IMG/VR virus record: IMGVR_UViG_3300035698_035310
Span: 124,001-188,000 of that record
Reading direction: 5' to 3' (one strand)
Length of the DNA: 64,000 bases
Below are positions 2,381 to 61,015 of this stretch, piece by piece (the stretch's first letter is position 1; each line of letters starts with the position of its first letter). The notes under the pieces are model-generated. The model ran no database searches. It worked only from the letters and a program-made list of their open reading frames with translations, and was not told the DNA's origin. A program made the translations under genes and the position numbers.

Positions 2381-2457
2381 GGGCGTGTATTCCAACCGGT
2401 AGAGAAACGAGACTTAAAATCTCGACAGTGTGGGTTCGAATCCCACCACGCCTACCA
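2381..2457 (+). tRNA. trnL: tRNA-Leu(UAA), short variable arm, encoded CCA
   Basis: acceptor GGGCGTG/CACGCCT; anticodon arm CGAGA-CTTAAAA-TCTCG; T arm GTGGG-TTCGAAT-CCCAC; A73 then CCA. Confidence 0.9.
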
Positions 2458-2461
2458 CATA

Positions 2462-2539
2462 GCTTCCGTCGTCTAACTGGATAAGGCACCCGACTTCTAA
2501 TCGGGATATTTGTAGGTTCGAGTCCTACCGGGAGCACCA
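2462..2539 (+). tRNA. trnR: tRNA-Arg(UCU), encoded CCA
   Basis: acceptor GCTTCCG/CGGGAGC; anticodon arm CCCGA-CTTCTAA-TCGGG; T loop TTCGAGT; ACCA end. Confidence 0.95.
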
Positions 2540-3646: not shown

Positions 3647-3704
3647 TTGACAAACCTTATTTTCTCCTATAATATGAACACATCATTATAAAGGGAGAAA
3701 TAAT

Positions 3705-3884
3705 ATGTTTGATATTTTAGAAGATGCATTTGATATTTTAACTGCGCCAATTCGCAACACGGTTGATGTACTTGAAGGATTGTCGGAAGGCGAACTTCGA
3801 ACGCATGCTATTGCGCAACTTGGTTCGAGTGCGGTTGCGGGTTTGGAAGCATATGAAATCATTGAGCTATTGTTGGAAGATTAA
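3705..3884 (+). CDS. small hypothetical protein, 59 aa (not in ORF track)
   Basis: MFDILEDAFDILTAPIRN...ELLLED; GGGAG SD; TAATG overlap with the next gene. Confidence 0.75.
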   Translation: MFDILEDAFDILTAPIRNTVDVLEGLSEGELRTHAIAQLGSSAVAGLEAYEIIELLLED

Positions 3885-4120
3885 TGGCAAAAGTTATTTT
3901 ACGCGAACCAGTAGATGTAATACGTTGGTGGCCGGGGGGCGACGAAATTGAAAATGTTACCGAGGTTCGTCATACTCAACTAGGATTTATTGGTCATTTG
4001 CAACAAGATGGAAATACGCTCATGGTAAAACCTGGTGATTATGTATTGTCATTTCTTGGAAAGCAAATAATAATGAATGAAGAAATTTTCAAAATCAACT
4101 TTAAAGGTCACAAAGAATGA
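3884..4120 (+). CDS. hypothetical protein
   Basis: 78-aa ORF coupled on both sides (TAATG, ATGA). Confidence 0.7.
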   Translation: MAKVILREPVDVIRWWPGGDEIENVTEVRHTQLGFIGHLQQDGNTLMVKPGDYVLSFLGKQIIMNEEIFKINFKGHKE

Positions 4121-4509
4121 ATCAAGATATATGGGATCGATTAGATAAAGTTAGCACATTCAGGCTTACTTCATATTTGAAAAATGAATATCCACAAGTG
4201 GTTGGTGTCATTCTTTTCAATTTGTCTAGGAAAACGGTTGCTGGTGTAATGGATGAATTACCAGAAAATTTTGCTATGGAAGTTGTAATGCGTATGTTGC
4301 GCACGGATGATGTTCGCAAGGAAGTTATTGATATCATTGAAGACACATTACAGGATGAATTTTTTAATAATGTAGTCACTTATGACAATAAAGAAAAATT
4401 TATAGGTGATATGTTCGATGTTATGGTTCATTCTGATCACATGGTAGAACAGCTTGAAGAACGCAATCGTGAAATGGCTGAAAAAGTTAAGGGGTATATG
4501 GACACATGA
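4117..4509 (+). CDS. fliG: flagellar switch protein FliG, middle domain only
   Basis: YLKNEYPQ (EHPQ motif), LPENFAMEVVMRMLR and LEERNREMAEKVK match alphaproteobacterial FliG-M plus helix MC; N- and C-domains absent. Confidence 0.85.
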   Translation: MNQDIWDRLDKVSTFRLTSYLKNEYPQVVGVILFNLSRKTVAGVMDELPENFAMEVVMRMLRTDDVRKEVIDIIEDTLQDEFFNNVVTYDNKEKFIGDMFDVMVHSDHMVEQLEERNREMAEKVKGYMDT

Positions 4510-5024
4510 TTAATCAATCTATGATAGAAGCATTAATACCGACAATGAAGAACACTGCATTTAAAGGTATTTGCACTAATCCAGATATTCAACTTGATAA
4601 TTTGGCACTTATGACATTTGGTGAATATGTTGATACAATACCGCTTCCTGCAATGTGTTGTAAGTTTGATTTTGCTGGATATGCTGCATTTATCATATTT
4701 GATAGTTCATTGATATATTCTATGGTTGATGTTTTATCTGGTGGTCGTCGTGGCACCGCTGCAATGCGAATTGAAGGCAGGGGATATACAACAATTGAAA
4801 AGCGCATTATTAAAGAATTAGTAATGGAATCAATTGTGAATGAGTTATTGTATGAACTCAATATATTATCAAAAGATATATATATGGAAATAGAACATAT
4901 AAGTCTCAGTCCAGATAATATGAGAAAGCAATTATCTGAAAATGAAATGGTTCAAATTGCACGAATGAGAGTAGACTTGGATGACCGTGGTGGTCGTTTC
5001 GAATTATGCGTTGAAGAACATTAA
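4506..5024 (+). CDS. fliM: flagellar switch protein FliM, middle (CheC-like) domain only
   Basis: FGEYVDTIPLP, DSSLIYSMVDVLSGGRRG, RIEGRGYTTIE and RVDLDDRGG match alphaproteobacterial FliM-M; CheY-binding N-terminus and SPOA domain absent. Confidence 0.85.
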   Translation: MINQSMIEALIPTMKNTAFKGICTNPDIQLDNLALMTFGEYVDTIPLPAMCCKFDFAGYAAFIIFDSSLIYSMVDVLSGGRRGTAAMRIEGRGYTTIEKRIIKELVMESIVNELLYELNILSKDIYMEIEHISLSPDNMRKQLSENEMVQIARMRVDLDDRGGRFELCVEEH

Positions 5025-5036
5025 AGGAGAAATAAT

Positions 5037-5813
5037 ATGGGTTGTGACATTCACATATATCCTGAAATATTTAAAGACGGAGTTTGGCAATTATCTGAAC
5101 CGTTAAATCTTGCTGCATGGTGGGATGAACGTATTTTAGATGAAGCAGATGATTATGATGCTCTTGATGAAGAACATAAATCTATGTCGAAAGAGCAAAT
5201 ATTAGAACAATATAAAAACGACACGCGTGTTCAATGGGAAGGGCCGTGGGATTCTAATTATTCACTTAGGGGTAGAAATTATAATTGGTTTTCGATACTT
5301 GCCAATGTTCGCAATGGATATGGATTTGCTGGTGTAGACACTGGTGATAGTTTTGTTCCTATTCATGCACCTAATGAAGAACCACGCGGTCTTCCTGATG
5401 ATGTGTCATCGGATGTTAAAAAACTTTCTGATAGTTGGGATTCCGACGGTCATTCACATTCATATAACACACTGCAAGAATTATTAGATTATGATTGGGA
5501 TGGTCAAACACGGATAACACGTGGTATTGTTAACGTTGAGAATTTCAAAGAATTTAAAGAAAAAGGTGAACCATCAGCATGGGCGGGTGGTGTTTCTAAT
5601 GTAGAAATAGTTTCTAACGAAGTCATGGCACAAATCGCATTAGGAATTTATGGCACACTTGATAGAAATGAAACTAGATATTATACTCATGTAGAATGGA
5701 AAAATACTTATCGTGAAAATGTTGGTGCAAGTTATTTGCAAGGCATTCTTGATGAACTAACAAAATATGGTAAACCAGAAAATGTAAGAATAGTATTTTG
5801 GTTTGACAATTAA
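5037..5813 (+). CDS. conserved phage hypothetical protein (MGCDIH...VFWFDN type)
   Basis: MGCDIH start, RNYxWFxxLAxVRN, EPRGLPDD, terminal RIVFWFDN. Confidence 0.75.
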   Translation: MGCDIHIYPEIFKDGVWQLSEPLNLAAWWDERILDEADDYDALDEEHKSMSKEQILEQYKNDTRVQWEGPWDSNYSLRGRNYNWFSILANVRNGYGFAGVDTGDSFVPIHAPNEEPRGLPDDVSSDVKKLSDSWDSDGHSHSYNTLQELLDYDWDGQTRITRGIVNVENFKEFKEKGEPSAWAGGVSNVEIVSNEVMAQIALGIYGTLDRNETRYYTHVEWKNTYRENVGASYLQGILDELTKYGKPENVRIVFWFDN

Positions 5814-6502: not shown

Positions 6503-6946
6503 ATGATGGGTAAATCCATTTCACAAAACCGCAAAGTGCGCCATAACTATACCATTGATGATGAGTATGAAGCGGGTATTGTATTACAGGGCAACGAAGT
6601 AAAAAGTTTGGCTGTTGGACAGTGCAGCATTGCTGAATCGTATGTTACCATTGAAGGCAATGAAGCATTTTTGGTTAATGCGCATATTGATCCATATGAT
6701 TTAGGTTCTAAGTTTGTGGCACAAGAGCCACGACGTCGGCGCAAATTATTGTTGCATAAACGCGAGATAAAGAATTTGCTTGTCAAATCGCAACAAGGGG
6801 GTTATACTATAGTTGCATTATCGATGTACTTCAATGACACGGGCAAGGTAAAACTTAAAATTGCCACTGCCAGAGGAAAGAAGAACTACGATAAGCGTGC
6901 CACGGAGAAGCAACGTGATTGGGATCGTGATAAGCGCAATTTATAG
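6503..6946 (+). CDS. smpB: SsrA-binding protein SmpB
   Basis: NRKVRHNY, EAGIVLQGNEVKSL, RRRKLLLHKREI, ARGKKNYDKR. Confidence 0.95.
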   Translation: MMGKSISQNRKVRHNYTIDDEYEAGIVLQGNEVKSLAVGQCSIAESYVTIEGNEAFLVNAHIDPYDLGSKFVAQEPRRRRKLLLHKREIKNLLVKSQQGGYTIVALSMYFNDTGKVKLKIATARGKKNYDKRATEKQRDWDRDKRNL

Positions 6947-6960
6947 GAAAGGTTAATACA

Positions 6961-7320
6961 ATGGATTCAGTGTTTATTATTTCATCGACCTCGGCTGGAT
7001 ATGAACATTCAGATACTGTGTTACAGGGTGCATGTTTGACTATGCAAGACGCAATAATTTCATTGGATCGCGTTAAAAAATGCATTGAGTTTGGTTACTT
7101 GAAAAAATTATTTAAAAGATATAGCGAACGCAAATATAACGACAATGATGAAAATTTATATATTAACGTCGTTTCACCAGAATATCGAATAATTGTCATG
7201 GAACAATATAACCAATTTGTAAAAAGTATGACACACAATGATGATATGTATTCTTGGGATTTGGGGCACGGCGATTGGATGGATTTGTTTATCGAAGAAG
7301 TTGAATTTTTTAATAGTTAA
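6961..7320 (+). CDS. hypothetical protein
   Basis: 119-aa ORF with SD, in gene run. Confidence 0.65.
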   Translation: MDSVFIISSTSAGYEHSDTVLQGACLTMQDAIISLDRVKKCIEFGYLKKLFKRYSERKYNDNDENLYINVVSPEYRIIVMEQYNQFVKSMTHNDDMYSWDLGHGDWMDLFIEEVEFFNS

Positions 7321-7334
7321 GAAAGGAAGACAAT

Positions 7335-8366
7335 ATGTTTAATTTTAAAGATGTAGGATGGAAAAAATTAACGGCAGTGGGGACAATTAGTTTCTTTGTT
7401 ATATATTTCATTGTTACGAGCATTCATGTTCAATACGCATCGGTTCGACCACATGTACTCAATGAAAACATTATCGTATATGATGAAATTGATGTTGTTG
7501 GTTATCGAACGATTTCTGCTGCAAGGCAGCTTATCACAATGTTGACTAATAAAACTGGTGGATATATGTCTAACGACAAACTACCACCATATAGTTGGGC
7601 TGATGATATGCCTAATTGGGAGTTTGGTGTTATTAAAGTTCTTCGTGGTTATAACATTGTTCTTCGTGAAAACTTTACACGATCACAAACACAATCAGTT
7701 GAAGATAAAGACGCGGTTGCAGCGATGACTGCACTTAACGTAGACAATCTTTCATGGATGTTCCCATCAGTTGAAGGGTGGCCTTGGACAAAGGGCGAGT
7801 ATGTTAAATCCAGCGAATCGTTGTTTGCACTTGAAAAACGATTACTTGATAACAATCCTGCCGACGGAAACTTTTTCACACGTGCTACATCGTTGGCGAC
7901 ATTTATTAATCGCAGCAATAAAGTTTTAGGTAGCCACAGCCAACTATTATCGGCATCTGTTACCAAAGAACGCATTAACACCGATATGACGGGTGACAAA
8001 AATGCAGAAGAAGCCAAACCACAAGAATATATCAACTCTGATATTTTAACATCGTGGTTACAAATCGATGATAATTTTTGGGAAGCACAGGGTTCAATCT
8101 ATGCATTGAGTGTTATCCTTAAAGCGATGGAAAGCGATTTTTATAAAGTGCTTGAAGATAAGAACGCACTGCCAGCGCTACGCCAGATCATTGTTGAACT
8201 GGAAACTGCTCAGGGATTGGTTTATTCGCCACTAATTATTAATGGTGCAGGTTTAAACTCGACGCCTTATGGACTTGGTGCAAACTATTCGTTAATTTTG
8301 GCAAACTACGTTAGCCGTGCAAGTGCTGCATTGACTGATTTGGAAAAGTTGCTTAAAAACGGATAA
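7335..8366 (+). CDS. DUF2333 family membrane-anchored protein
   Basis: N-terminal TM helix; DDMPNWEFG, FTRSQTQSVED, IDDNFWEAQG, KNALPALRQIIVELE, ANYVSRASAA. Confidence 0.85.
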   Translation: MFNFKDVGWKKLTAVGTISFFVIYFIVTSIHVQYASVRPHVLNENIIVYDEIDVVGYRTISAARQLITMLTNKTGGYMSNDKLPPYSWADDMPNWEFGVIKVLRGYNIVLRENFTRSQTQSVEDKDAVAAMTALNVDNLSWMFPSVEGWPWTKGEYVKSSESLFALEKRLLDNNPADGNFFTRATSLATFINRSNKVLGSHSQLLSASVTKERINTDMTGDKNAEEAKPQEYINSDILTSWLQIDDNFWEAQGSIYALSVILKAMESDFYKVLEDKNALPALRQIIVELETAQGLVYSPLIINGAGLNSTPYGLGANYSLILANYVSRASAALTDLEKLLKNG

Positions 8367-13541: not shown

Positions 13542-14819
13542 ATGCAATTACTTGTCGATAATGAGTTAAAGTATGGAAATTTGTTGTTGGTTGATTCTGC
13601 ACATTTAATCGCACGGTATAATCGTGCATTGAATGTTATATGTGGAAAAAAGACCGAGTTGGAAATTTTTCATATTGATGGCAGTGGATATAGCCCCGAA
13701 GTCGCGAAAGAACTCGACGATAAAGAATATATGAATCCACACGGTGTTAATAAGAAAATCATCATTTTGTCATTAGAACAAGAAGGTCTTCCAGTATTGG
13801 ATTCTTATTTCTCCACTACACGTGATTTGATTAGACGATTTATTCAAGATAATAAATCTGAACTTTTTGCACTAACGAGTCGTGATGTGGTTTATGGCGA
13901 ACTGGAGAATTCAACATTCAAAATTGAAAGTTTCACGGATTTGCTATGTATTAAACGCATCATATTTGAAATCAATACAGTTGGTGATTCCATCAAAAAA
14001 GGAAAACAGCTTACCAGTTTGATTAAATCATTTATGGTTAACGATAATATGTGGCATGATGAAAAAACGGTTGAAGAGATTATTGGGTTATCATCTGTGG
14101 TTGGTGATATTCGTCGACACCAAGTGACGCCGTCGCACACCGAATATAAACAAATCAATTTTTATTCACGGCATTACGGCGGCGTATATGTATTCAATCA
14201 CGACAATGGTGATTATACAGTTATTGCGCATGAAGAACAATACAGAAAAGAGGCTGAAACTTGTCATTTAAATGTTAAATTCATCCACATAGATGATAAA
14301 AAAGAAGTGATTGCATTTTTAAAGAAGAATAACATCGTTGAGATGTATAGTGATCGATATTTGCGCAAGAATATAGATTTGATGCGTGAAAAAATTAATT
14401 TCATCGCAATTGATCATATGTCACAGACGCACACAGACGCAGATTTGACGGATATTAGCGATGATGAAATTAAAAAATATATTTATGATCACTATGATGA
14501 GTTACCTAAAGAGTTCCGCGTTCTTTCAAAAGCAGTAAAATTGATTGATAACGGATATTCTGTGGATTTGGAATCTGGTTCTGATGATATATTTTTCTAC
14601 TTTGCTCGTTCTAGCGATCACGATCTCAAAGATTTGGTTAATCAATTGATTGCGTATTACACGCCGTTAGATTTTCTAAATGTGTTTATATCCAACAAAC
14701 GTGCTTTTTATGAGTTGTATGACGAGTGGTCCAATAGTAAAAAATCATTTGTTGTTAATTACTTGGTTAGAGAATATCAACAAGATAAACACAGAATTAA
14801 AGGTAAATTCTTTGGGTAA
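13542..14819 (+). CDS. DUF6638 family protein
   Basis: YGNLLLVDSAHLIARYNRAL, FHIDGSGYSPE, LFALTSRDVVYGEL, NFYSRHYGGVYVF recalled as family motifs. Confidence 0.7.
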   Translation: MQLLVDNELKYGNLLLVDSAHLIARYNRALNVICGKKTELEIFHIDGSGYSPEVAKELDDKEYMNPHGVNKKIIILSLEQEGLPVLDSYFSTTRDLIRRFIQDNKSELFALTSRDVVYGELENSTFKIESFTDLLCIKRIIFEINTVGDSIKKGKQLTSLIKSFMVNDNMWHDEKTVEEIIGLSSVVGDIRRHQVTPSHTEYKQINFYSRHYGGVYVFNHDNGDYTVIAHEEQYRKEAETCHLNVKFIHIDDKKEVIAFLKKNNIVEMYSDRYLRKNIDLMREKINFIAIDHMSQTHTDADLTDISDDEIKKYIYDHYDELPKEFRVLSKAVKLIDNGYSVDLESGSDDIFFYFARSSDHDLKDLVNQLIAYYTPLDFLNVFISNKRAFYELYDEWSNSKKSFVVNYLVREYQQDKHRIKGKFFG

Positions 14820-19867: not shown

Positions 19868-22126
19868 ATGCCTAACGGATTTGACCAACGACACATTTCT
19901 ATAATGCTTCAAAAAGCAGTAACATTAGCAGAAAAATACGATCACATATATATAACATTAGAACATATCAGTTTAGTATTACTGGATGATAAGTCCGTTG
20001 ATCACGGTATTAAAGAATGCGGCGGCGACATAAAACTTATTAAAGAAATGGTTTTGACTGCATTGTTAGATGAAGCAGATATAACTGAAGCAGGAACTGA
20101 GCCACAACCAACAAGAGCAGTCATCAATGTTATTCAACGGGCAATCCAGCATTCTGTTGGATCAGGCCGCAATACAGTTGAACCATTTTATCTTATGGCA
20201 AGTTTGTTAATGGAAAAAGATTCCGTTGCTGTATGGGCATTAGCACAACAAAATGTTGATCGTGTAAGTTTTATTAGAACTATAAATGTTCCACCATCAG
20301 GACAAAATAAAGGTGGCCCGATGAATGAACTCGATCCTATAACGGGTCAACCTATGCCACAACCTGAAAATGCATTAAGAGATTATTGTGTTAATTTGAA
20401 TGAAAAGGTAATTGCTGGTGATATTGATCCATTGATAGGTCGCGAAAAAGAAATTGAACGGTCACTACAAGTTTTATCTAGACGACGCAAAAACAATCCA
20501 TTGCTTGTTGGTGAGCCAGGAGTTGGTAAAACCGCTATTGCAGAAGGATTGGCATGGAAAATTGTTAATGAAACCGTGCCAAATTATATCAAAGATTCTA
20601 TTGTATATTCGTTGGATATTGGTGCACTTATGGCTGGTGCCAAATTTCGCGGTGATGTCGAAGAACGATTAAAAGCGGTTCTTGCCGGATTGGAAGAAGT
20701 TGGCAAAACCAACAAAACCATATTATTCATTGATGAAATTCATACCATTATTGGTGCGGGTGCTACATCAGGTGGAAGTATGGATGTTAGTAACCTATTG
20801 AAACCCGCACTTGCTGCTGGTTCATTACGTTGCATGGGTTCCACCACATATGCTGAATATAATAAGTATTTCGAAAAAGATGCGGCACTTAAGCGTCGTT
20901 TCAAAAAAATTGATATTATTGAACCTACTGTTGATGAAACAAAAACTATTATCAAAGGTTTGGCAAAATATTTTGCTGAGTATCATGAAGTTAAATTCAC
21001 AAAAGAAGCATTAATGAGTGCAGTTGATTTATCCGTTAAGCATATACACGATAACAAACTTCCAGATAAAGCGATTGATGTTATTGATGAGGCGGCGGCA
21101 GCACAAAGATTATTCGATGGCGAAGATCGCCTTGAAATCATTGATGTTAAACAAATTGAAGAAACCGTTGCAAAGATTGCAAGGATTTCTATTGATGCAA
21201 CATCAAAAACCGACAAAGATAGATTGCGTAACCTTGCAGAAAATCTAACAACACATGTGTTTGGTCAAGAAGAAGCGATTGATGTTCTAACCAAGGCAGT
21301 TAAATTAAGCAAATCTGGATTGCGTGAAGAAAATAAACCGATTGGTAATTTCTTATTCAGTGGACCTACAGGCGTAGGTAAAACCGAAGTTGCAAAACGT
21401 CTTGCCGATGAACTAGACGTTCCGTTGGTGCGATTTGATATGTCTGAATATATGCAAAAGCACGAAGTGTCTAAACTTATTGGATCGCCACCTGGTTATG
21501 TTGGTCATGATGATAGTGATGGATTTTTAATTGAAGAAATTGATAAGCATAATTATTGTGTTTTATTGTTAGATGAAATCGAAAAAGCACACCAAGATAT
21601 ATTCAACGTTCTGTTACAAGTTATGGATAATGCAACACTAACCGGTGGTCGCAATAAAACAGTGCGCTTTGACAATGTTATAATCATCATGACATCAAAT
21701 GCTGGTGCATCAGACCTTGCAAAAGAAGTTATGGGATTTGGCAACGAAGAGCGAGTTGGCGATGATCTTATAGCCATCGAAAAATTATTTACACCTGAAT
21801 TTAGAAATCGTTTGGATAAAATCGTTGGATTTAAACCATTACAACAAGAAATAATGAATAAAGTTGTTGTTAAATTTATAAAACAATTGAAAGTTCAACT
21901 TAAAACACAGGATGTTAAACTTACGTTGATGAAGAAAGCCATTGAGTGGCTTGCCGTTAAAGGATACAGTTCCAAATATGGAGCACGACCACTTTCGCGT
22001 GTAATAGACAATCATATCAAGCAGCCAATATCTGAAGAGTTATTATTTGGTCAACTTGAAAATGGTGGTTCAGTTAAAATTGACATCGTTGAAGACGAAC
22101 TTGAATTCACTTACAAACCAAAATAA
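19868..22126 (+). CDS. clpA: ATP-dependent Clp protease ATP-binding subunit ClpA
   Basis: Clp-N domain, GEPGVGKT and GPTGVGKT Walker A motifs, FIDEIH, RFDMSEY, no ClpB M-domain. Confidence 0.92.
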
Positions 22127-43092: not shown

Positions 43093-44007
43093 ATGAAAAC
43101 CGATGAATACGGAAATCGCATGAAAGATTACGAAAGAATGGAAACCGGAAGACGGTTTATGCCACTTCTACCCGTATATGCGCGGATTGATGGTCGTAGT
43201 TTTAGTAAGTTCACCAAAGGAATGCGCCGCCCTTATGATAAACGCATGTCACGATGTATGATTGAAACAGCAAAATATCTTGTCGATCAAACCGACGCTA
43301 TGATAGGATATGTCCAAAGTGATGAGATTTCTCTTGCATGGTATAGCGATTCAGTTGATAGCCAAATTTTCTTTGATGGCAAGATTCAAAAGATGGTTTC
43401 AGTTCTTGCTGGTATGGCATCAGTTAAGTTTCTCCACGAATATCGAAATACATTTGGTGCACAGGCAGATATGGATGCGCTACCGTTGTTCGACGCACGT
43501 GTATTTCAACTACCTACTAAGGTAGAACTTGCAAACACATTTCTTTGGCGAGAACGTGATGCTACCAAAAATGCTATCAGTATGGCTGCACGATCATTTT
43601 ATAGCCATGCTGAATTACATAAAAAATCTGGTTCTGAAATGCAAGAAATGATGTTCCTAGCAGGACAGAACTTCAACGACTATCCAGCATTTTTTAAACG
43701 TGGAACATTTGTTCGCCGTGAATTAGTAGACATTGAACTGTCTGCTGGTGAATATGCCAACATTCCAGATCGTCATAAACCACATAGCATGTGGGTTAAA
43801 CGCCATCGCATGGTTGAAATGGATATGCCATCATTTGGAACAGTAATGAATCGCGACGATGTAATATTTGAAAAAGATGACCCTATCACTGCCGCTAAAA
43901 AAGTTCATTTTGGTTTATTGGCAGATGATGACGATATAATGAGTTATAATAATCCAATGGGTATGGTATTTGGTGGTGAAAACCCTATCAAAAAAGAAGG
44001 AACGTAA
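43093..44007 (+). CDS. tRNA(His) guanylyltransferase Thg1-like protein
   Basis: RMKDYE, YARIDGRSFSKFT, GYVQSDEISL, FDARVF, WRERDATKNAISM, FKRGTF. Confidence 0.92.
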   Translation: MKTDEYGNRMKDYERMETGRRFMPLLPVYARIDGRSFSKFTKGMRRPYDKRMSRCMIETAKYLVDQTDAMIGYVQSDEISLAWYSDSVDSQIFFDGKIQKMVSVLAGMASVKFLHEYRNTFGAQADMDALPLFDARVFQLPTKVELANTFLWRERDATKNAISMAARSFYSHAELHKKSGSEMQEMMFLAGQNFNDYPAFFKRGTFVRRELVDIELSAGEYANIPDRHKPHSMWVKRHRMVEMDMPSFGTVMNRDDVIFEKDDPITAAKKVHFGLLADDDDIMSYNNPMGMVFGGENPIKKEGT

Positions 44008-56172: not shown

Positions 56173-57036
56173 ATGTCTAAAGATATTTATAACACTAAAT
56201 TTATATTCGGTCAAGATTATCATGGATTTATTTATGAATGGGTTGATAATTCTAATGGTAAAAAATATATAGGATCGCATAAAGGGTCGATTGATGATGG
56301 ATATATAGGTTCAGGAACATATTTTATTTCTGCTTATAAAAAAAGAACCCATTGTTTTAGTCGAATAATATTAGAATATATATCAAAAAATATAGATGAT
56401 ATATATACCATTGAACAAAAATGGTTAAATATGGTAAATAATATATCATCAAATGAATCATATTATAATCTATCAAATAACGCAACAGGGGGAAATTCTG
56501 AAAAAAACTACGCACGAAAAAGAAATGGTGAATTTACTGAAAAAGAAATGATTGCACATGAGCGAAAAGCCAATGGTATATTTACACCAAAAGAACTAGA
56601 GTTTCATAAACGTCGAAAAAATAGATTTTTAAATGGTGATTATACAAAAGCAGAAAAACAGTCTTATATACGATCTAAAGAGCGAAAATCAGCAGGGAAT
56701 TTTACAGATGCAGAAATTAAATATTTTAGTGAACAAAAAAAGAGAAAATCAAATGGTATATTTACACCAAAAGAAATAGAGTTTCATAATAATCAAAGTA
56801 ATCGGAAGTCGGCAGGAAATTTTACAGATGCCGAGTTAAAATGTTTAAATCTCGATAAAATAAGAAAATCAAAAGGCTTATTTACCGATGCGGAATTAAA
56901 AAATTTTAAGAACATGAAGGGAAAACGATGGCTTACCAAAGATTTTATCAATAAATTAATATCAAAAAATTTAATACAACAATATATTGATGCCGGTTGG
57001 ATATTTGGAAAATATAAAAAAATCAATCCCAACTAA
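56173..57036 (+). CDS. GIY-YIG homing endonuclease (Seg-like) with C-terminal repeats
   Basis: GFIYEW...KKYIGSH...DGYIGSG, FSRIILE, EQKWL, YYNL; seven G-x-(F/Y)-T-x-x-E repeats. Confidence 0.88.
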   Translation: MSKDIYNTKFIFGQDYHGFIYEWVDNSNGKKYIGSHKGSIDDGYIGSGTYFISAYKKRTHCFSRIILEYISKNIDDIYTIEQKWLNMVNNISSNESYYNLSNNATGGNSEKNYARKRNGEFTEKEMIAHERKANGIFTPKELEFHKRRKNRFLNGDYTKAEKQSYIRSKERKSAGNFTDAEIKYFSEQKKRKSNGIFTPKEIEFHNNQSNRKSAGNFTDAELKCLNLDKIRKSKGLFTDAELKNFKNMKGKRWLTKDFINKLISKNLIQQYIDAGWIFGKYKKINPN

Positions 57037-60000
57037 ATTTATCAATCCCATCAAAATCTATTTCACTTCCGTCTGATAATGTTAAACTTCCTGACATTTC
57101 TTCCGATGTTGGAAGATTGTTTGGATTGCTATCTGCCGTAAATGTTTCACCATCAACTGTTAATGCCCACCCTTGTGTGCCTTCCATATTTAGTGTATCT
57201 GTTCCCTCGCCGCCCGATATCCAATCACCGCCACCAAATCCGTCGCCGCCTTCGCCACCGAAGATAAACATATCATCGCCACCATTGCCCATTACGTGGT
57301 CATTAGCATCTGTTGCATCGTCGCTATCAAATGTATCATCTGCTTTTTTTCCTTTGTCTTTTCCATCTATTTCATTATATTCAGAACCGCCTTCACCACC
57401 CTCGCCGCCTTCACCACCATCTTTATCTTTTTTATCTTTACCTTTTCCACCTTCACCGCCTTCACCGCCATGTCCATGCCCATGTGATCCACCTTCACCG
57501 CCTTCACCACCTTCATTGCCTTCAACGTCGATAATGGTCGTAGCGGTTCCGGTTCCACCTTCACTGTCCACTATATTATATGTGAAACTATCTTCACCAG
57601 AAAATCCTTCATATGGCGTATAAGTCCATGTTCCATTTTCATTATCTATTATAATTCCATTTTCAGGATCGTCAATGCTGGTAATAGTTATAGTGTCGCC
57701 ATCTAAATCTGTATCATTAGATAGCAAATCTTCAGAAGAAAACGTTATAGAATTATCATCATCAATATCAAATTCATCATCAACACCAAGAGGTGTGGTA
57801 TTTCCTGTTTCATCTACTAACCACGTGGATGATTGTGTGTCAACAGATACAACAGATGCCGTAACAGGTGTATCTCGTTCTATTTCTACTGTTCCATCTG
57901 AATACGTTAATGTGTTAACCGAAGTGTTTGATGTTTCTGTTGTTATGTCTGTAGTAGTTGTTTCTGTAAACACTCGATTAATCACAGTTGTTTTTGTTCC
58001 ATCGTCATTTTCAACAATCGATTCATTATTTACAAATGTTATGGTTGATTCTGGTTCACTCGTTATAATATTTTCTTCTGTTTCTATGGTTGTAACAATT
58101 TCAGGATCAACATATTCGGTTTCGACATTAGTTAATGTTTCCGTTCGTGTATCTGAGGTTATTTCGCTATCAATGTTGGGTGTTCCATTTTCGACTTCAA
58201 CCGTTCCGTCTGAATATGTTATTGTGCTGACGGGAGTTATCGTTGTGGTGGTTGTGGTTTCAGTCGCATATTCATTTGTGGTTGTTGTAGTAGTATCTAT
58301 TTGTTCGCGGTTATTATCCGTATCGATAGTTGTATCACTTTCTATTATGTCGTTAGTTGTTTCCCATGTTTCATCGCCCACAACAGCATCGGTAGTGGTA
58401 ACGTATTCAGTGGTTATTGTTGGTTCTTCATATGTAGTAACAATTTCGTCCGTGGTATCAACTCTTGATTCAGTTGTTGTATCTGCTGTAATAACAGGAT
58501 CGTCCTGTTCAATTTCAACAGTTCCATCTGAATACGTAATGGTTGTTATTTGTGTGGTTGTGGTTGTGGTTGTTGTATCAGTTTCATAATTGTTTGTGGT
58601 TGTGGTCGTTGTATCTAATTGCTCACGGTTATTATCCAAATCATTTGAACGTGACACATCATCTTCGGTTGATGTTGAAATTAAGGTTTCATCGCCTACG
58701 ACAACGTTGGTTGTTACTTCTTCTGACGTAACAATTTGTGGCTCTTCGTAAACAACGTTGGTATCAGTTAACACTTCTTCTCTTGTATCGGTTGTAGGTT
58801 CAACTGTTTCAACTGGCGTTCCGTATTCTATTTCAACTGTTCCATCTGAATAAGTGATAGTGATAACGGGTGTTGTTGTTACGGTTGTAGTTGTTATTGT
58901 ATCATATGTATTTGTGGTTGTGTTGGTAGTATCTAATTGTTCGCGGTTATTATCCGTATCAATAGTGCGAACAGTTTCTGATTCTGTTTCGGTGTTAGAT
59001 AATATTTCATCGCTAACAACTACTGTTGTTTCATGCTCATAGGTTTCAACAATTTCAGGGTCTTCATTCGTAGTTATTGTTTCTGAAGTCACTTCATCGC
59101 GTGTTGATGTATCAGTGGTAGTTTCTATCGCTGGTGTGCCGTATTCTGTTTCTACAGTGCCGTCGCTGTAAGTTATGGTATGAACAGGCGTAGATGTGGT
59201 TGTGGTGGTTGTATCAACCGCATAGGTATCTGTGGTCGTTGTTGTCGTATCTACCCGTTCGTTATTATATTCTGTTTCAATAGTTGTCACTACATTTTCT
59301 TCTGATGCTGTTCCAGTTTGATATTCATCGCCAATTGTATCCACTGATTGCACATCAGTCGTGATTGTAATAACAGGCTCTTCTGTACTTGTGGATATAT
59401 CAATTTCGCGGATTTCATCACGTGTTGATGTATCAATTTGAACTGTGTTATCGGTTGGTTCTGCGCGTTCGATTTCAATAGTTCCATCGCTATATGTAAT
59501 GGTTTGAACTTCGATTGTTGTTGTTGTTTCCAATATGGGCGTTTCAAATGTATCTGTATATTCACGCGTCACAGTAACTATTTCTTGATTATTATCTAAA
59601 TCGTTAACACGCGATGATGAATCATAGAACTCTGTATTAGTTAAAGTTTCTTTGCCGTTGTGAAGGTCGGTTGAAATTTCATATGTGACAACAATGGTTG
59701 GTTCTTCATATGTGGTAACTATTTCATCGGCAATATCGGTTCTTGTTTCTGTATTTGTATTTTTTGTAATAGACGGATCGCCCTGTTCAATTTCAACTGT
59801 TCCATCTGAATAAGTGATAGTTATTACTGGTGTTATTGTGGTGGTAGTCGTTGTATCAATGGCATAGTTATTCGTGGTAGTAGTTGTTGTATCTACTTGT
59901 TCACGATTGTTATCAGTGTCTATTATACGGTCAATTTCTGTCCCGGTTTCTGATCCAATTAGAATTTCATTACCAATTTCATTTGATATTTCAGTTGTAT

Positions 60001-61015
60001 ATTCGGTTGTGATAACAGGTAGTTCTATATCAGTAGCAAATATTGCATCTCTAATCGCAACTGTTGTATCAACTGTGGTGTTGGATTCTATCACAGGGTC
60101 ACCCACAATCGTTTCAATAGTGCCATCACTATATGTAATAGTTTCGGTTGGCGTTGTTGTTTCTGTGACCGTTGAATCAATCGTTGTGGTATCTGTATAA
60201 TTACGAGTCGTTGTGACTATTTCTTGATTGTTTGCTAGATCATTTTCTTTTGAAACTACATCTTCGTATGTTGTTACAACACATGGATCATCGATAACTG
60301 TATTTGAAATAATTTCGTATGAAATTTCTCTAGACATCTCGGTCACTGGTTCTACAGCATCATCGCCACCACCACCATTGGTGCCATTATCAATAGGAAA
60401 CCCAAGATCGGGGTTAAGCACAGAATTAAGAATTGCGTCAAAGTCAATTTCAGGCATAACGTCTGTATTCGCGAGTGGATCATTTGGCACCTCGTCAACG
60501 CTTTGATTTACATCATTTATTGTAGAAAATCCGCTATCTTCCGCACGCTGCTGTTCTTCTTCGGCTACTTTTTTAAATACATCATCGCCATGCATTTCGC
60601 GTGTATCAAATATCAAACTGGCACGATCTATAGCATAATCTATTTGTTCTGATGTAAACCCATTCTCAATTAATTCATTCCTTGTGTAACCATTGACGTC
60701 AATAGATACATTATTTATATCATTAAACGCTACTATATTATTTTCAGTATTGACATATATACCCAACGATGTCTGTATTACTGTGCCTTCTGTGATTAGT
60801 GCACTTAACAATTCCGCTTCTGTTAGTTGTGAACCCATGTGAATATTTTGTGAACCAGAACCAAACACATCTTCTTTATCGCCACCATCACCTTCGTGAA
60901 GTTGTTGTACCGATGCATCAAGGTCAATTTCATCTTCGGTCTGTAAGACAGTTAAATCATCAAGTATTGAGTGATTTTCGCGAACATCGTCGTCGTCATT
61001 TGTTATTTCAGCCAT
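57023..61015 (-). CDS. large acidic Thr-rich repeat protein with cadherin-like/Big domain and RTX-like Ca-binding tail (adhesin-like)
   Basis: eight ~106-aa T(I/L)TYSDGT repeats; LLSNDTDLDGD...GTWTYTP...DSFTY; GEGGEGG tracts; GNGGDD and GGEGTDTL nonapeptides. Confidence 0.8.
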   Translation of the reverse strand: MAEITNDDDDVRENHSILDDLTVLQTEDEIDLDASVQQLHEGDGGDKEDVFGSGSQNIHMGSQLTEAELLSALITEGTVIQTSLGIYVNTENNIVAFNDINNVSIDVNGYTRNELIENGFTSEQIDYAIDRASLIFDTREMHGDDVFKKVAEEEQQRAEDSGFSTINDVNQSVDEVPNDPLANTDVMPEIDFDAILNSVLNPDLGFPIDNGTNGGGGDDAVEPVTEMSREISYEIISNTVIDDPCVVTTYEDVVSKENDLANNQEIVTTTRNYTDTTTIDSTVTETTTPTETITYSDGTIETIVGDPVIESNTTVDTTVAIRDAIFATDIELPVITTEYTTEISNEIGNEILIGSETGTEIDRIIDTDNNREQVDTTTTTTNNYAIDTTTTTTITPVITITYSDGTVEIEQGDPSITKNTNTETRTDIADEIVTTYEEPTIVVTYEISTDLHNGKETLTNTEFYDSSSRVNDLDNNQEIVTVTREYTDTFETPILETTTTIEVQTITYSDGTIEIERAEPTDNTVQIDTSTRDEIREIDISTSTEEPVITITTDVQSVDTIGDEYQTGTASEENVVTTIETEYNNERVDTTTTTTDTYAVDTTTTTTSTPVHTITYSDGTVETEYGTPAIETTTDTSTRDEVTSETITTNEDPEIVETYEHETTVVVSDEILSNTETESETVRTIDTDNNREQLDTTNTTTNTYDTITTTTVTTTPVITITYSDGTVEIEYGTPVETVEPTTDTREEVLTDTNVVYEEPQIVTSEEVTTNVVVGDETLISTSTEDDVSRSNDLDNNREQLDTTTTTTNNYETDTTTTTTTTQITTITYSDGTVEIEQDDPVITADTTTESRVDTTDEIVTTYEEPTITTEYVTTTDAVVGDETWETTNDIIESDTTIDTDNNREQIDTTTTTTNEYATETTTTTTITPVSTITYSDGTVEVENGTPNIDSEITSDTRTETLTNVETEYVDPEIVTTIETEENIITSEPESTITFVNNESIVENDDGTKTTVINRVFTETTTTDITTETSNTSVNTLTYSDGTVEIERDTPVTASVVSVDTQSSTWLVDETGNTTPLGVDDEFDIDDDNSITFSSEDLLSNDTDLDGDTITITSIDDPENGIIIDNENGTWTYTPYEGFSGEDSFTYNIVDSEGGTGTATTIIDVEGNEGGEGGEGGSHGHGHGGEGGEGGKGKDKKDKDGGEGGEGGEGGSEYNEIDGKDKGKKADDTFDSDDATDANDHVMGNGGDDMFIFGGEGGDGFGGGDWISGGEGTDTLNMEGTQGWALTVDGETFTADSNPNNLPTSEEMSGSLTLSDGSEIDFDGIDKFSWD
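57890..60140 (-). repeat. degenerate tandem repeat, ~318-bp period, 8 copies
   Basis: SDGT-coding cores near 60123, 59802, 59484, 59160, 58842, 58524, 58205, 57893; 31-nt identity at 59791-59821 and 58831-58861. Confidence 0.8.

What the first reader, a model, noticed from the sequence alone, without database searches (positions are those of the whole stretch)
4117..5024. Phage-encoded isolated FliG-middle and FliM-middle domains: a possible flagellar C-ring jammer
Seen: two ATGA-coupled ORFs. The first has YLKNEYPQ...EVVMRMLR...LEERNREMAEKVKGYMDT and ends where the MFxF motif would lie. The second has DSSLIYSMVDVLSGGRRG...RIEGRGYTTIE...DDRGG. Known: the FliG-M EHPQ motif binds the FliM-M GGxG loop; FliG-N binds FliF, FliG-C contacts the stator, FliM-N binds CheY-P and the FliM SPOA domain binds FliN. 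The phage keeps exactly the two mutually interacting domains and lacks every other functional domain, and no other flagellar gene is in the window. Inference: the pair acts dominant-negatively or as a decoy to stop or bias rotation or block flagellar assembly. This could exclude flagellotropic superinfection, save proton-motive force, or change host motility.
Basis: partly seen in the sequence, partly recalled or inferred. Interest (0 to 1): 0.86.

Follow-up and report, generated by a model that had tools for sequence, protein, structure and literature searches.

The report
Phage-encoded truncated flagellar rotor proteins
A giant bacteriophage carries two back-to-back genes that are cut-down copies of the bacterial flagellar rotor proteins FliG and FliM, keeping only the parts that grip each other and losing every part needed to make a motor turn, which suggests the virus interferes with its host's swimming machinery.

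Summary
ORF 4117-4509 (130 aa) is FliG middle domain plus helix MC and the first C-terminal subdomain (FliG_CN). It stops exactly at the MFXF hinge. ORF 4506-5024 (172 aa) is a complete FliM middle domain and nothing else. The two overlap by ATGA. Both pass Pfam's curated cut-offs and match solved C-ring structures.

The window is part of a ~570-kb contig listed in IMG/VR. GC and GC3 of both genes match the phage, not the GC-rich alphaproteobacterial donors.

The pair is not a one-off. At least six other phage-like contigs carry a fliG'-fliM-fliN operon. In all of them FliG' lacks the FliF anchor and the torque helix. Two of them also end at the MFXF hinge. In the bacterial relatives sampled, these three genes are not adjacent.

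Across all phage copies, conservation concentrates on the EHPQ/Arg patch of FliG and the GGxG loop block of FliM, the mutual contact surface.

Best reading (about 50%): a non-productive competitor for the host FliG_M-FliM_M interface that uncouples or blocks the C ring. The function is untested. I found no stand-alone FliM_M elsewhere and no report in the searchable literature.

The parts
3647..3675 (+). Sigma-70-like promoter match (TTGACA-17-TAATAT) upstream of the co-directional gene string that contains the pair
   Evidence: Consensus scan only, 10 of 12 matches. No terminator-like site lies between 3705 and 5326 on the + strand. This is weak evidence for one transcription unit.
3705..3884 (+). 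Small upstream ORF, 59 aa, unknown function
   Evidence: no family hit. It abuts the next ORF.
3884..4120 (+). Small upstream ORF, 78 aa, unknown function. Its stop overlaps the fliG' start (ATGA at 4117-4120)
   Evidence: No Pfam hit; weak phrog_14585 match (E=0.02). No PADLOC hit.
4117..4509 (+). fliG': 130-aa protein made of FliG middle domain, helix MC and FliG_CN (ARM_C). It starts at the first residue of FliG_M and stops at the MFXF hinge. FliG_N (FliF anchor) and FliG_CC (torque helix) are absent
   Evidence: Pfam and NCBIfam, PDB sequence hits, alignments A3, A4 and A9, AF2 model plus Foldseek.
4186..4197 (+). Codons for E24-Y25-P26-Q27, the alphaproteobacterial form of the EHPQ FliM-binding motif
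   Evidence: Identical in all 7 reduced phage FliG' and in the bacterial consensus. The motif's role is taken from PMC6700473.
4291..4293 (+). Codon for R59 in ...EVVMRMLR..., aligned with the conserved Arg of the EHPQR patch
   Evidence: Identical in all phage FliG'. Its equivalence to the 'R' of EHPQR rests on alignment position, so it is an inference.
4506..4509 (+). ATGA overlap: the fliM' start codon overlaps the fliG' stop codon (translational coupling)
   Evidence: Sequence. The same tight or overlapping junction occurs in L008, L091, L092, L099 and L100.
4506..5024 (+). fliM': 172-aa protein that is a complete FliM middle domain only. The N-terminal CheY-P-binding peptide and the C-terminal SpoA (FliN-like) domain are absent
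   Evidence: Pfam and NCBIfam, PDB sequence hits, alignments A1, A2 and A5, AF2 model plus Foldseek TM 0.86-0.88.
4701..4799 (+). Codons for residues 66-98 (DSSLIYSMVDVLSGGRRGTAAMRIEGRGYTTIE), the block that holds the GGxG-type FliG-binding loop (GGRRG at 4740-4754)
   Evidence: 30 of 33 residues match the bacterial consensus, against 36% over the whole protein. Most positions are identical in all 8 phage FliMs.

Best explanation
The two genes are a translationally coupled module of a huge (~570 kb) phage. They derive from the flagellar switch complex of an alphaproteobacterial host and have been reduced to the parts that hold FliG and FliM together. Gene 1 makes FliG_M, helix MC and FliG_CN. 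It can still offer the EHPQ/Arg surface to FliM_M, and probably the ARM surfaces used for FliG-FliG stacking. It cannot bind the MS ring because FliG_N is gone, and it cannot meet the stator because the torque subdomain is gone. Gene 2 makes FliM_M with an intact GGxG-type loop. It cannot receive CheY-P and cannot join the FliN base of the C ring. Neither product can replace a host part, so the most likely action is competitive. Phage FliG' would occupy host FliM_M, and perhaps host FliG ARM surfaces. Phage FliM' would occupy host FliG_M. As host FliM and FliN turn over, or as new motors assemble, the wall of the C ring would be uncoupled from the FliG ring. That would stop or derange rotation and switching, and would block C-ring-dependent flagellar export. 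Shown: domain content, exact truncation points, interface-centred conservation, long residence in phage genomes, and recurrence of the module in other phages. Inferred: binding to host partners, inhibition of motility, and the benefit to the phage (for example excluding flagellum-dependent phages, saving energy, or changing host behaviour).
For: 1. Domain content and boundaries. 2. Parts needed for motor function are missing; domain roles are taken from PMC6700473: FliG_N binds FliF, the torque helix R281/D289 sits in FliG_CC, FliM_N binds CheY-P, and FliM_C binds FliN. 3. Recurrence: six further distinct phage-like contigs (L008, L091, L092, L093, L099, L100) carry fliG'-fliM-fliN. Every FliG' lacks FliG_N. 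Four have lost MFXF and carry a 12-residue deletion over the torque helix. L099 and L100 end at the MFXF hinge, as the window does. 4. A profile of phage FliG' separates these proteins (195 bits or more) from about 7,800 bacterial FliG (192 bits or less). 5. In 80 Rhodospirillales-type loci fliM is adjacent to neither fliG nor fliN, so the operon was assembled in phages. 6. Conservation: all phage FliG' equal the bacterial consensus at E24 Y25 P26 Q27, L48 P49, E55 V56, M58 R59, R62 and E115 R116; all phage FliMs do so in the 66-98 loop block and at 160-166; overall the window proteins are only 44% and 36% identical to the bacterial consensus. Strict retention of the host-type interface argues for a partner that does not co-evolve with the phage, that is, a host protein; this last step is inference. 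7. GC is 33-34% and GC3 is 0.29 and 0.22, the same as the phage background; no remnants of the deleted domains survive, and the genes are tightly packed.
Against: No experiment and no complex prediction was possible, so binding to host proteins is unproven. If the two phage products simply bind each other, they would neutralise each other as competitors. The closest relatives keep full FliM plus FliN, which a plain sponge model does not need; this hints at a different or broader function, such as a soluble C-ring-like assembly or a CheY-P or FliH sink. The FliG' segment 85-130 is modelled with only moderate confidence (pLDDT 58-78). The host is unknown. No pair of close variants exists, so dN/dS could not be measured.
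Confidence: 0.5

Rival explanations
1. Exapted module with a non-flagellar job. The phage uses the FliG_M-FliM_M heterodimer as a structural or scaffolding unit for a process of its own. In relatives the unit would be a FliG'-FliM-FliN assembly.
For: The operon is conserved in phages without any other flagellar gene. Relatives keep FliM plus FliN, which can self-assemble. Five phage FliMs carry an extra N-terminal motif that is absent from 80 bacterial FliM ORFs.
Against: The contact residues stay identical to the host type rather than drifting with a co-evolving partner. The CheY-binding motif is kept in relatives, which only makes sense in a flagellar or chemotaxis context. No phage process is known to use such proteins.
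Confidence: 0.17
2. Soluble decoy for host regulators that dock on FliG_M or FliM_M, such as c-di-GMP brake proteins, clutch proteins or metabolic enzymes. In relatives it could also soak up CheY-P or FliH. The effect would be to rewire or keep up motility rather than to block it.
For: Relatives retain LNQDEIDSLLGFD and FliN, which are CheY-P and FliH docking sites (roles from PMC6700473). FliM_M is a known docking surface for other proteins; PDB 5X0Z, a FliM-SpeE complex, appears among the fold matches.
Against: The window version has lost the CheY-binding peptide, the SpoA domain and FliN. What it conserves most is the mutual FliG-FliM contact, not a distinct regulator site. There is no PilZ, REC or glycosyltransferase partner in the window.
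Confidence: 0.15
3. Motor-supporting auxiliary genes. The phage replenishes C-ring subunits so that the infected cell keeps swimming.
For: A 543-kb IMG/VR contig carries full-length FliG, FliM and FliN. Its FliM is 88% identical to Magnetospirillum-type FliM. FliM and FliN are known to turn over in working motors (references in PMC6700473).
Against: The window proteins lack the FliF anchor, the torque helix, the CheY-binding peptide and the FliN-binding domain, so they cannot function in a motor. The torque helix and anchor are lost in all seven reduced phage FliG'.
Confidence: 0.06
4. Decaying fragments of captured host DNA with no function.
For: Both proteins are truncated. They sit on very long branches. 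The stand-alone FliM_M is a singleton among 1.84 billion cluster representatives.
Against: The ORFs are intact and cut exactly at domain boundaries, with no leftover sequence and with coupled start and stop codons. Base composition is fully ameliorated. The same truncations recur in contigs whose proteins are only 26-38% identical. Key motifs are invariant while roughly 60% of the rest has changed. The models show complete, confidently folded domains.
Confidence: 0.06
5. Not viral. The contig is a bacterial chromosome or plasmid fragment, or a chimeric assembly.
For: Huge-phage bins are sometimes contaminated. One 'UNVERIFIED bacteriophage' record hit by FliG' (MT835480.1) is in fact a bacterial fliF-G-H-I operon.
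Against: The same sequence is assembled in six contigs of up to 570 kb and is listed in IMG/VR. The window is dense with PHROG families, and no host flagellar neighbours are present. GC is uniform.
Confidence: 0.04

Closest known systems
Bacterial flagellar rotor protein FliG (Pfam FliG_N / FliG_M / FliG_C; TIGR00207)
   Same: FliG_M fold with the EHPQ-type motif (EYPQ, as in Alphaproteobacteria) and the conserved Arg, followed by helix MC and FliG_CN. It is 44-46% identical to Rhodospirillales-type FliG over this stretch.
   Different: No FliG_N, so no FliF binding. No MFXF hinge and no FliG_CC torque helix. It is 130 aa rather than about 338 aa, is encoded in a phage, and scores 36.7 bits against an equivalog cut-off of 226.7.
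Bacterial flagellar switch protein FliM (Pfam FliM + FliMN_C; TIGR01397)
   Same: Complete FliM middle domain. The GGRRGTAAMRIEGRxYTTIE loop is identical to alphaproteobacterial FliM, and TM is 0.86-0.88 to Salmonella FliM in cryo-EM C rings.
   Different: No N-terminal CheY-P-binding peptide and no SpoA/FliN-like C-terminal domain. It is 172 aa rather than about 320-400 aa, and scores 70.4 bits against a cut-off of 219.6. No CheC-type phosphatase motif is present.
Phage fliG'-fliM-fliN operon (defined here from L008, L091, L092, L093, L099, L100)
   Same: Same gene order and coupling. FliG' has lost the anchor and torque helix. The window FliM groups with L008, L091, L092 and L093 (SH-aLRT 98). 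The phage FliG' sequences tested form one clade in the best tree (SH-aLRT 77).
   Different: The window version has no fliN. Its FliM has lost both terminal regions. It is the most reduced form seen.
Host-encoded motor brakes and clutches that act on FliG or FliM (YcgR-type PilZ proteins, EpsE, MotI), recalled from general knowledge
   Same: The proposed target surface (FliG/FliM of the rotor) and the proposed outcome (a motor stopped without disassembly).
   Different: No sequence or fold relationship. Those are dedicated regulators, whereas this pair is made of truncated copies of the rotor subunits themselves.
Phage proteins that disable host motility organelles (for example inhibitors of type IV pili; FlaGrab, which binds Campylobacter flagella, PMC7099621; PIT4, which inhibits motility through two-component systems, PMC10714779)
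   Same: The concept of a phage product interfering with a motility apparatus or with surface-receptor function.
   Different: Those act on pili, on the external filament, or on regulation. None is a homologue of a rotor component.

Membership tests
FliG (flagellar rotor protein) | FliG middle domain with the EHPQ(R) FliM-binding motif | tested here: met
   PF14841, 62.2 bits against a cut-off of 25. E24-Y25-P26-Q27 and R59 are invariant. Foldseek rmsd is about 1 A to FliG_M of 4QRM, 3SOH and 8UMD.
FliG (flagellar rotor protein) | N-terminal domain that binds FliF (MS ring) | tested here: not met
   The protein starts at the residue aligned with bacterial position ~110. PF14842 scores 18.1 bits, below its cut-off of 25, and that match overlaps the M-domain repeat.
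FliG (flagellar rotor protein) | MFXF hinge and FliG_CC with the torque helix (R281/D289 equivalents) | tested here: not met
   The ORF ends at ...GYMDT, aligned to ...LMFT. PF01706 scores 15 bits, below its cut-off of 23.3.
FliG (flagellar rotor protein) | Equivalog-level score (TIGR00207 / NF004260) | tested here: not met
   36.7 bits against 226.7, and 27.4 bits against 550.
FliM (flagellar switch protein) | FliM middle domain with the GGXG FliG-binding loop | tested here: met
   PF02154, 80 bits against a cut-off of 27. GGRRG matches the alphaproteobacterial FliM loop. TM is 0.86-0.88 to FliM in 8UMD and 9N49.
FliM (flagellar switch protein) | N-terminal CheY-P-binding peptide (LxQxEIDxLL) | tested here: not met
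   Absent. The protein begins at the first helix of FliM_M. The peptide is present in the other phage FliMs.
FliM (flagellar switch protein) | C-terminal SpoA (FliMN_C) domain that binds FliN | tested here: not met
   No PF01052 hit. The ORF ends after ...DRGGRFELCVEEH. No remnant lies downstream.
FliM (flagellar switch protein) | Equivalog-level score (TIGR01397) | tested here: not met
   70.4 bits against 219.6.
Phage fliG'-fliM-fliN module (defined here) | FliG' lacks FliG_N and the torque helix | tested here: met
   Alignments A4 and A9. The profile score of 195 bits places it with the phage group.
Phage fliG'-fliM-fliN module (defined here) | fliM immediately downstream, coupled to fliG' | tested here: met
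   ATGA overlap at 4506-4509. The same arrangement occurs in L008, L091, L092, L099 and L100.
Phage fliG'-fliM-fliN module (defined here) | Full-length FliM followed by fliN | tested here: not met
   The window FliM is the middle domain only. No FliN-like sequence exists anywhere in the 64 kb.
CheC/CheX/FliY phosphatases (fold relatives of FliM_M) | Active-site motif [DS]xxxExxN(x22)P | tested here: not met
   No match to the motif. Foldseek TM is 0.62-0.73 to CheC, CheX and FliY, against 0.86-0.88 to FliM.
Known anti-phage defence or counter-defence proteins | Match to a PADLOC model | tested here: not met
   No hit for the pair or for five neighbouring ORFs.
Dominant-negative inhibitor of the flagellar motor (functional class) | Binds host FliG or FliM and reduces motility | not testable with these tools
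   This needs complex prediction or bench assays. Only indirect support exists: interface conservation and loss of all productive domains.

The most novel reading that the evidence does not exclude
A lineage of huge phages of Alphaproteobacteria carries a dedicated operon of virus-evolved rotor proteins: a FliG with no anchor and no torque helix, with FliM and FliN. The window shows it reduced to a minimal FliG_M/CN-FliM_M pair. With it the virus would take direct control of the host flagellar motor during infection, by stopping it, uncoupling it from chemotaxis, or blocking flagellar export. These would be the first virus-encoded components or mimics of the bacterial flagellar rotor, and a natural set of minimal, evolution-optimised C-ring inhibitors.
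Probability: 0.4. Interest if true: 0.9.

Novelty: new variant of a known kind. Interest (0 to 1): 0.78.

Why it matters
If the reading is right, phages do more than use flagella as receptors. They would also encode trimmed copies of the rotor's own subunits to manipulate the motor from inside the cell.

That would add a new class to phage host-takeover functions and would bear on competition with flagellum-dependent phages.

It would also give motor researchers naturally minimised proteins that isolate the FliG_M-FliM_M and FliG ARM-stacking interfaces. The series found here runs from full-length genes, to FliG lacking its N domain and torque helix, to FliG cut at the hinge, to the FliM_M-only partner. 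It amounts to a ready-made deletion analysis done by evolution.

The idea can be tested with simple expression and motility assays in laboratory alphaproteobacteria.

Tried and rejected
1. Isolate phage genomes (INPHARED). There was no DNA match and no tblastn match for FliM'. The single FliG' hit, MT835480.1, turned out to be a bacterial fliF-fliG-fliH-fliI operon inside an 'UNVERIFIED bacteriophage' scaffold, so it is irrelevant.

2. Short FliG or FliM hits that looked like other stand-alone domains (P0126, P0127, P0148, P0186, P0195, P0196, P0200, P0166, P0239). All are frameshifted or fragmentary GC-rich bacterial genes, or lie in ordinary flagellar operons.

3. dN/dS. Every pair of near relatives (L093/L094/L095; L091/L096/L097; the window against L002/L003/L004) is 100% identical at the nucleotide level. 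The distinct types are only 26-38% identical to the window protein, so synonymous sites are saturated. No estimate was possible.

4. AU test of monophyly of all phage FliMs. It did not finish in the time allowed. L098, which falls in the same clade, has 68% GC on a 1.5-kb contig and may be bacterial, so I do not claim that the whole 14-row clade is viral.

5. Synteny between the window and the other phage contigs beyond the module. Only a DNA methyltransferase and two weak matches are shared.

6. Neighbouring genes as flagellar parts. None of the upstream or downstream small ORFs in the window, L008, L092 or L093 matches a flagellar family.

7. PopZ-like motif. There was no Pfam hit and no literature hit for the peptide string.

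8. Literature. Searches for phage-encoded FliG, FliM or switch proteins returned nothing relevant.

9. BFVD. No viral protein there has the FliM_M fold.

10. A hetero-complex prediction was not possible, because the structure tool takes one unchanged chain only.
Full report
**Observation**

The upstream 78-aa ORF is also coupled, by ATGA at 4117-4120. The next gene starts 13 bases after the fliM' stop, behind a GGAG. A promoter-like site lies at 3647-3675, and no terminator-like site follows before 5326. That is weak evidence for one transcription unit.

**Identity of the two proteins**

- ORF1 hits Pfam FliG_M (E=5e-17, 62 bits, cut-off 25). It aligns to positions 113-238 of the 338-position FliG equivalog model.
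- ORF2 hits Pfam FliM (E=3e-22, 80 bits, cut-off 27). It aligns to positions 55-214 of the 320-position FliM model.
- Both fall far below the full-length equivalog cut-offs, as expected for fragments.
- PDB sequence searches return only FliG and FliM chains.
- The AlphaFold2 model of ORF2 (pLDDT 82, pTM 0.77) superposes on Salmonella FliM inside cryo-EM C rings with TM 0.86-0.88 and rmsd 1.7-1.9 A over 167-169 columns. It is a complete FliM middle domain.
- The model of ORF1 (pLDDT 80) matches FliG_M at about 1 A rmsd for residues 1-85. Residues 85-130 are helical with lower confidence.

**Exact boundaries**

Alignments with bacterial proteins give the following.

- ORF1 starts at the residue equivalent to the first residue of FliG_M (bacterial ...MWDKLGNV...). 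It ends at ...KGYMDT, aligned with ...KALMFT of the MFXF hinge.
- ORF1 therefore contains FliG_M, helix MC and FliG_CN (ARM_C). It lacks FliG_N and FliG_CC.
- ORF2 starts at the first helix of FliM_M and ends just after ...DRGGRFEL.... It lacks the CheY-P-binding peptide (LNQxEIDSLLG in relatives) and the SpoA domain.
- EYPQ and GGRRG are the normal alphaproteobacterial forms of EHPQ and GGxG.

Domain roles come from PMC6700473:
- FliG_N binds FliF.
- FliG_M-FliG_CN contacts build the FliG ring.
- The EHPQR motif in FliG and the GGXG motif in FliM make the FliG_M-FliM_M contact.
- The torque helix lies in FliG_CC, beyond the MFXF hinge.
- FliM_N binds CheY-P.
- FliM_C binds FliN.
- FliM and FliN turn over in working motors.

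**Genome context**

The window is identical to part of a 570,549-bp ENA contig and of a 359-kb IMG/VR contig. The protein is recorded on six contigs.

The window has two tRNA genes. It also has many phage-family proteins: a ClpA-like ATPase, NAD-dependent ligase, DNA polymerase exonuclease subunit, methyltransferases, a Thg1-like enzyme and a homing endonuclease.

Window GC is 35%. The two genes have GC 33-34% and GC3 0.29 and 0.22, inside the range of other window ORFs (0.19-0.35).

No other flagellar gene or remnant is detectable in the 64 kb.

**Donors**

The nearest cellular FliMs are from Rhodospirillales and Acetobacterales. Their identity to the window protein is flat at 37-43%. These bacterial proteins are very similar to one another (terminal branches are short, median about 0.1 substitutions per site). 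The phage copy has therefore diverged strongly and is not a recent capture.

**Relatives in other phages**

- *Full-length set.* A 543-kb IMG/VR contig (GC ~50%) has a full-length FliG at one locus. About 240 kb away it has full-length FliM plus FliN, next to TrpRS and a TelA-like gene. Its FliM is 88% identical to Magnetospirillum-type FliM.
- *Operons with a degenerate FliG C-terminal domain.* Four distinct phage-like contigs (GC 30-42%) carry fliG'-fliM-fliN with a FliG' of about 200 aa: L008 (27 kb), L091 (5.7 kb), L092 (3.2 kb) and L093 (40.5 kb). Their neighbours include ribosomal protein S21, a Phage_ABA_S domain protein, an AAA_28 ATPase, DNA methyltransferases and a 1,429-aa protein.
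- *Operons with FliG' cut at the hinge.* Two more carry the operon with a hinge-truncated FliG': L099 (17.8 kb, FliG' 133 aa) and L100 (39.7 kb, FliG' 227 aa, beside TelA, an ART domain protein, RNase H and an aminoacyl-tRNA synthetase).

In alignment A9 all seven reduced FliG' lack FliG_N; six start at the same residue, and L100 has an unrelated ~105-aa leader before it. The four ~200-aa forms have lost MFXF and share a 12-residue deletion exactly over the torque helix (bacterial ...SERAAKMLKEDMDA...). The window, L099 and L100 all end at the hinge.

A profile of the phage FliG' separates the phage set cleanly (195-319 bits) from about 7,800 bacterial FliG (192 bits or less) among 5.8 billion proteins.

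The five phage FliG' tested form one clade in the best tree (SH-aLRT 77). The branches are long, so this is weak. The window FliM groups with L008, L091, L092 and L093 (SH-aLRT 95-98). Those four keep a degenerate CC domain, so truncation at the hinge may have happened more than once.

In 80 Rhodospirillales-type loci fliM is adjacent to neither fliG nor fliN. Magnetospirillum, for example, has FliL-FliM-DUF6468-MgtE_N-like-REC-CheZ. The phage operon therefore brings together genes that are dispersed in the sampled bacterial relatives.

An exhaustive phmmer search of 1.84 billion cluster representatives found no other genuine stand-alone FliM_M. The short hits I inspected were all fragments or frameshifted bacterial genes. 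BFVD holds no viral protein with this fold.

**Selection**

No close variants exist, so dN/dS could not be computed. Indirect evidence for function is strong.

- The ORFs are intact and cut at domain boundaries, with no remnants.
- Gene coupling is conserved, and the truncations recur among proteins that are only 26-38% identical to the window's.
- Composition is fully ameliorated.
- Conservation is focused on the contact surfaces. All seven phage FliG' match the bacterial consensus at E24 Y25 P26 Q27, L48 P49, E55 V56, M58 R59, R62 and E115 R116. All eight phage FliMs match it across most of block 66-98 (which holds GGRRGTAAMRIEGR) and at 160-166. Overall identity of the window proteins to the bacterial consensus is only 44% and 36%.

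**Mechanism**

The window proteins cannot replace host subunits. FliG' has no anchor and no torque helix. FliM' has no CheY input and no FliN base.

What they keep is the mutual FliG_M-FliM_M interface, in host-identical form, plus the FliG ARM elements. I therefore favour a competitive, non-productive interaction with host FliM_M and FliG_M/CN. This would uncouple or prevent the C-ring wall, helped by the natural turnover of FliM and FliN.

I put this at about 0.5. The steps from 'interface conserved' to 'binds host partner' to 'inhibits motility' are inference.

The main difficulty is that the relatives keep full FliM plus FliN, including the CheY-binding motif. This suggests that the ancestral module forms a soluble, stator-blind, MS-ring-free C-ring-like unit, possibly a sink for CheY-P or FliH. 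The window version would then be a further specialisation, or would have a related but different role.

Rivals, with my estimates: exaptation to a non-flagellar role (0.17), decoy for regulators (0.15), motor support (0.06), decay (0.06) and non-viral origin (0.04).

**Comparison and novelty**

The proteins are FliG- and FliM-derived, but they fail the membership tests for functional FliG or FliM because defining domains are absent. No PADLOC model matches and no CheC phosphatase motif is present. Literature searches found no report of phage-encoded FliG, FliM or FliN, or of such truncated pairs. The library is limited to open-access papers and preprints.

I rate the finding as a new variant of known protein kinds in a new biological setting, with high interest because it is surprising and directly testable.

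Noticed in passing
L005:5683-6699; L009:5449-6819 and 6782-7117 (IMGVR_UViG_3300024239_000011, 543 kb): A second huge IMG/VR contig (GC ~50%) encodes a full-length FliG. About 240 kb away it encodes a full-length FliM and FliN, beside TrpRS, a TelA-like gene and an RNA ligase. Its FliM is 88% identical to Magnetospirillum-type FliM, so it looks like a recent capture of the whole C-ring gene set.
   Followed up: partly
L099:6001-6100; L008:6591-6680; L092:1770-1850; L093:8670-8740; L009:5530-5600: Five phage FliMs begin with a motif EPxME(E/D/Q)ILxSxRRI(L/I)xED that is absent from all 80 bacterial FliM ORFs examined. From memory it resembles the N-terminus of the alphaproteobacterial pole-organising protein PopZ. 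Pfam gave no hit and the literature search for the peptide string found nothing.
   Followed up: partly
L091:5217-5546 (-); L093:11057-11389 (-): A small cREC_REC protein (PF20274, 'cyclic-phosphate processing receiver domain', E=1e-20) sits three genes downstream of the fliG'-fliM-fliN operon, on the opposite strand, in two different phage contigs. The window has no counterpart.
   Followed up: no
L001 (MT835480.1 39488-47838): A GenBank record labelled 'UNVERIFIED: Bacteriophage sp.' from human faeces contains an ordinary bacterial fliF-fliG-fliH-fliI operon. The scaffold is probably bacterial, or a contaminated viral bin.
   Followed up: partly
P0293 (ncbi: MAG Pseudolabrys sp., 343 aa): A bacterial protein annotated 'FliG C-terminal domain-containing protein' carries FliMN_C together with FliG_M and FliG_C Pfam domains. 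It is an apparent FliN-FliG fusion lacking FliG_N. It is the best non-phage hit to the phage FliG' profile (192 bits).
   Followed up: no
window 2381-2539; 6506-6946; 43093-44007: Translation-related genes typical of huge phages: tRNA-Leu(TAA) and tRNA-Arg(TCT); an SmpB homologue (from the gene calls of L002); and a Thg1-like tRNA-His guanylyltransferase (phrog_4717, E=6e-81).
   Followed up: no
window 7335-8366; 13542-14819; 19868-22126; 57023-61015 (-): Large conserved proteins of unclear role: DUF2333 (E=8e-91), DUF6638 (E=6e-100), a ClpA-like double AAA+ ATPase (42-48% identical to those of the jumbo phages Atu_ph07, Phosso and PA5oct), and a 1,330-aa protein with a cadherin-like domain on the minus strand.
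   Followed up: no
window 4122-4379 (-) and 4589-4861 (-): Antisense ORFs inside fliG' and fliM' give BLAST hits to antisense ORFs of other fliG and fliM loci. They are shadows of the conserved coding strand, not genes.
   Followed up: yes
window 5037-5813: The gene directly downstream of fliM' (258 aa) belongs to phrog_10141 (E=1e-51, unknown function) and has no Pfam hit. It is not found next to the module in the other phage contigs.
   Followed up: partly
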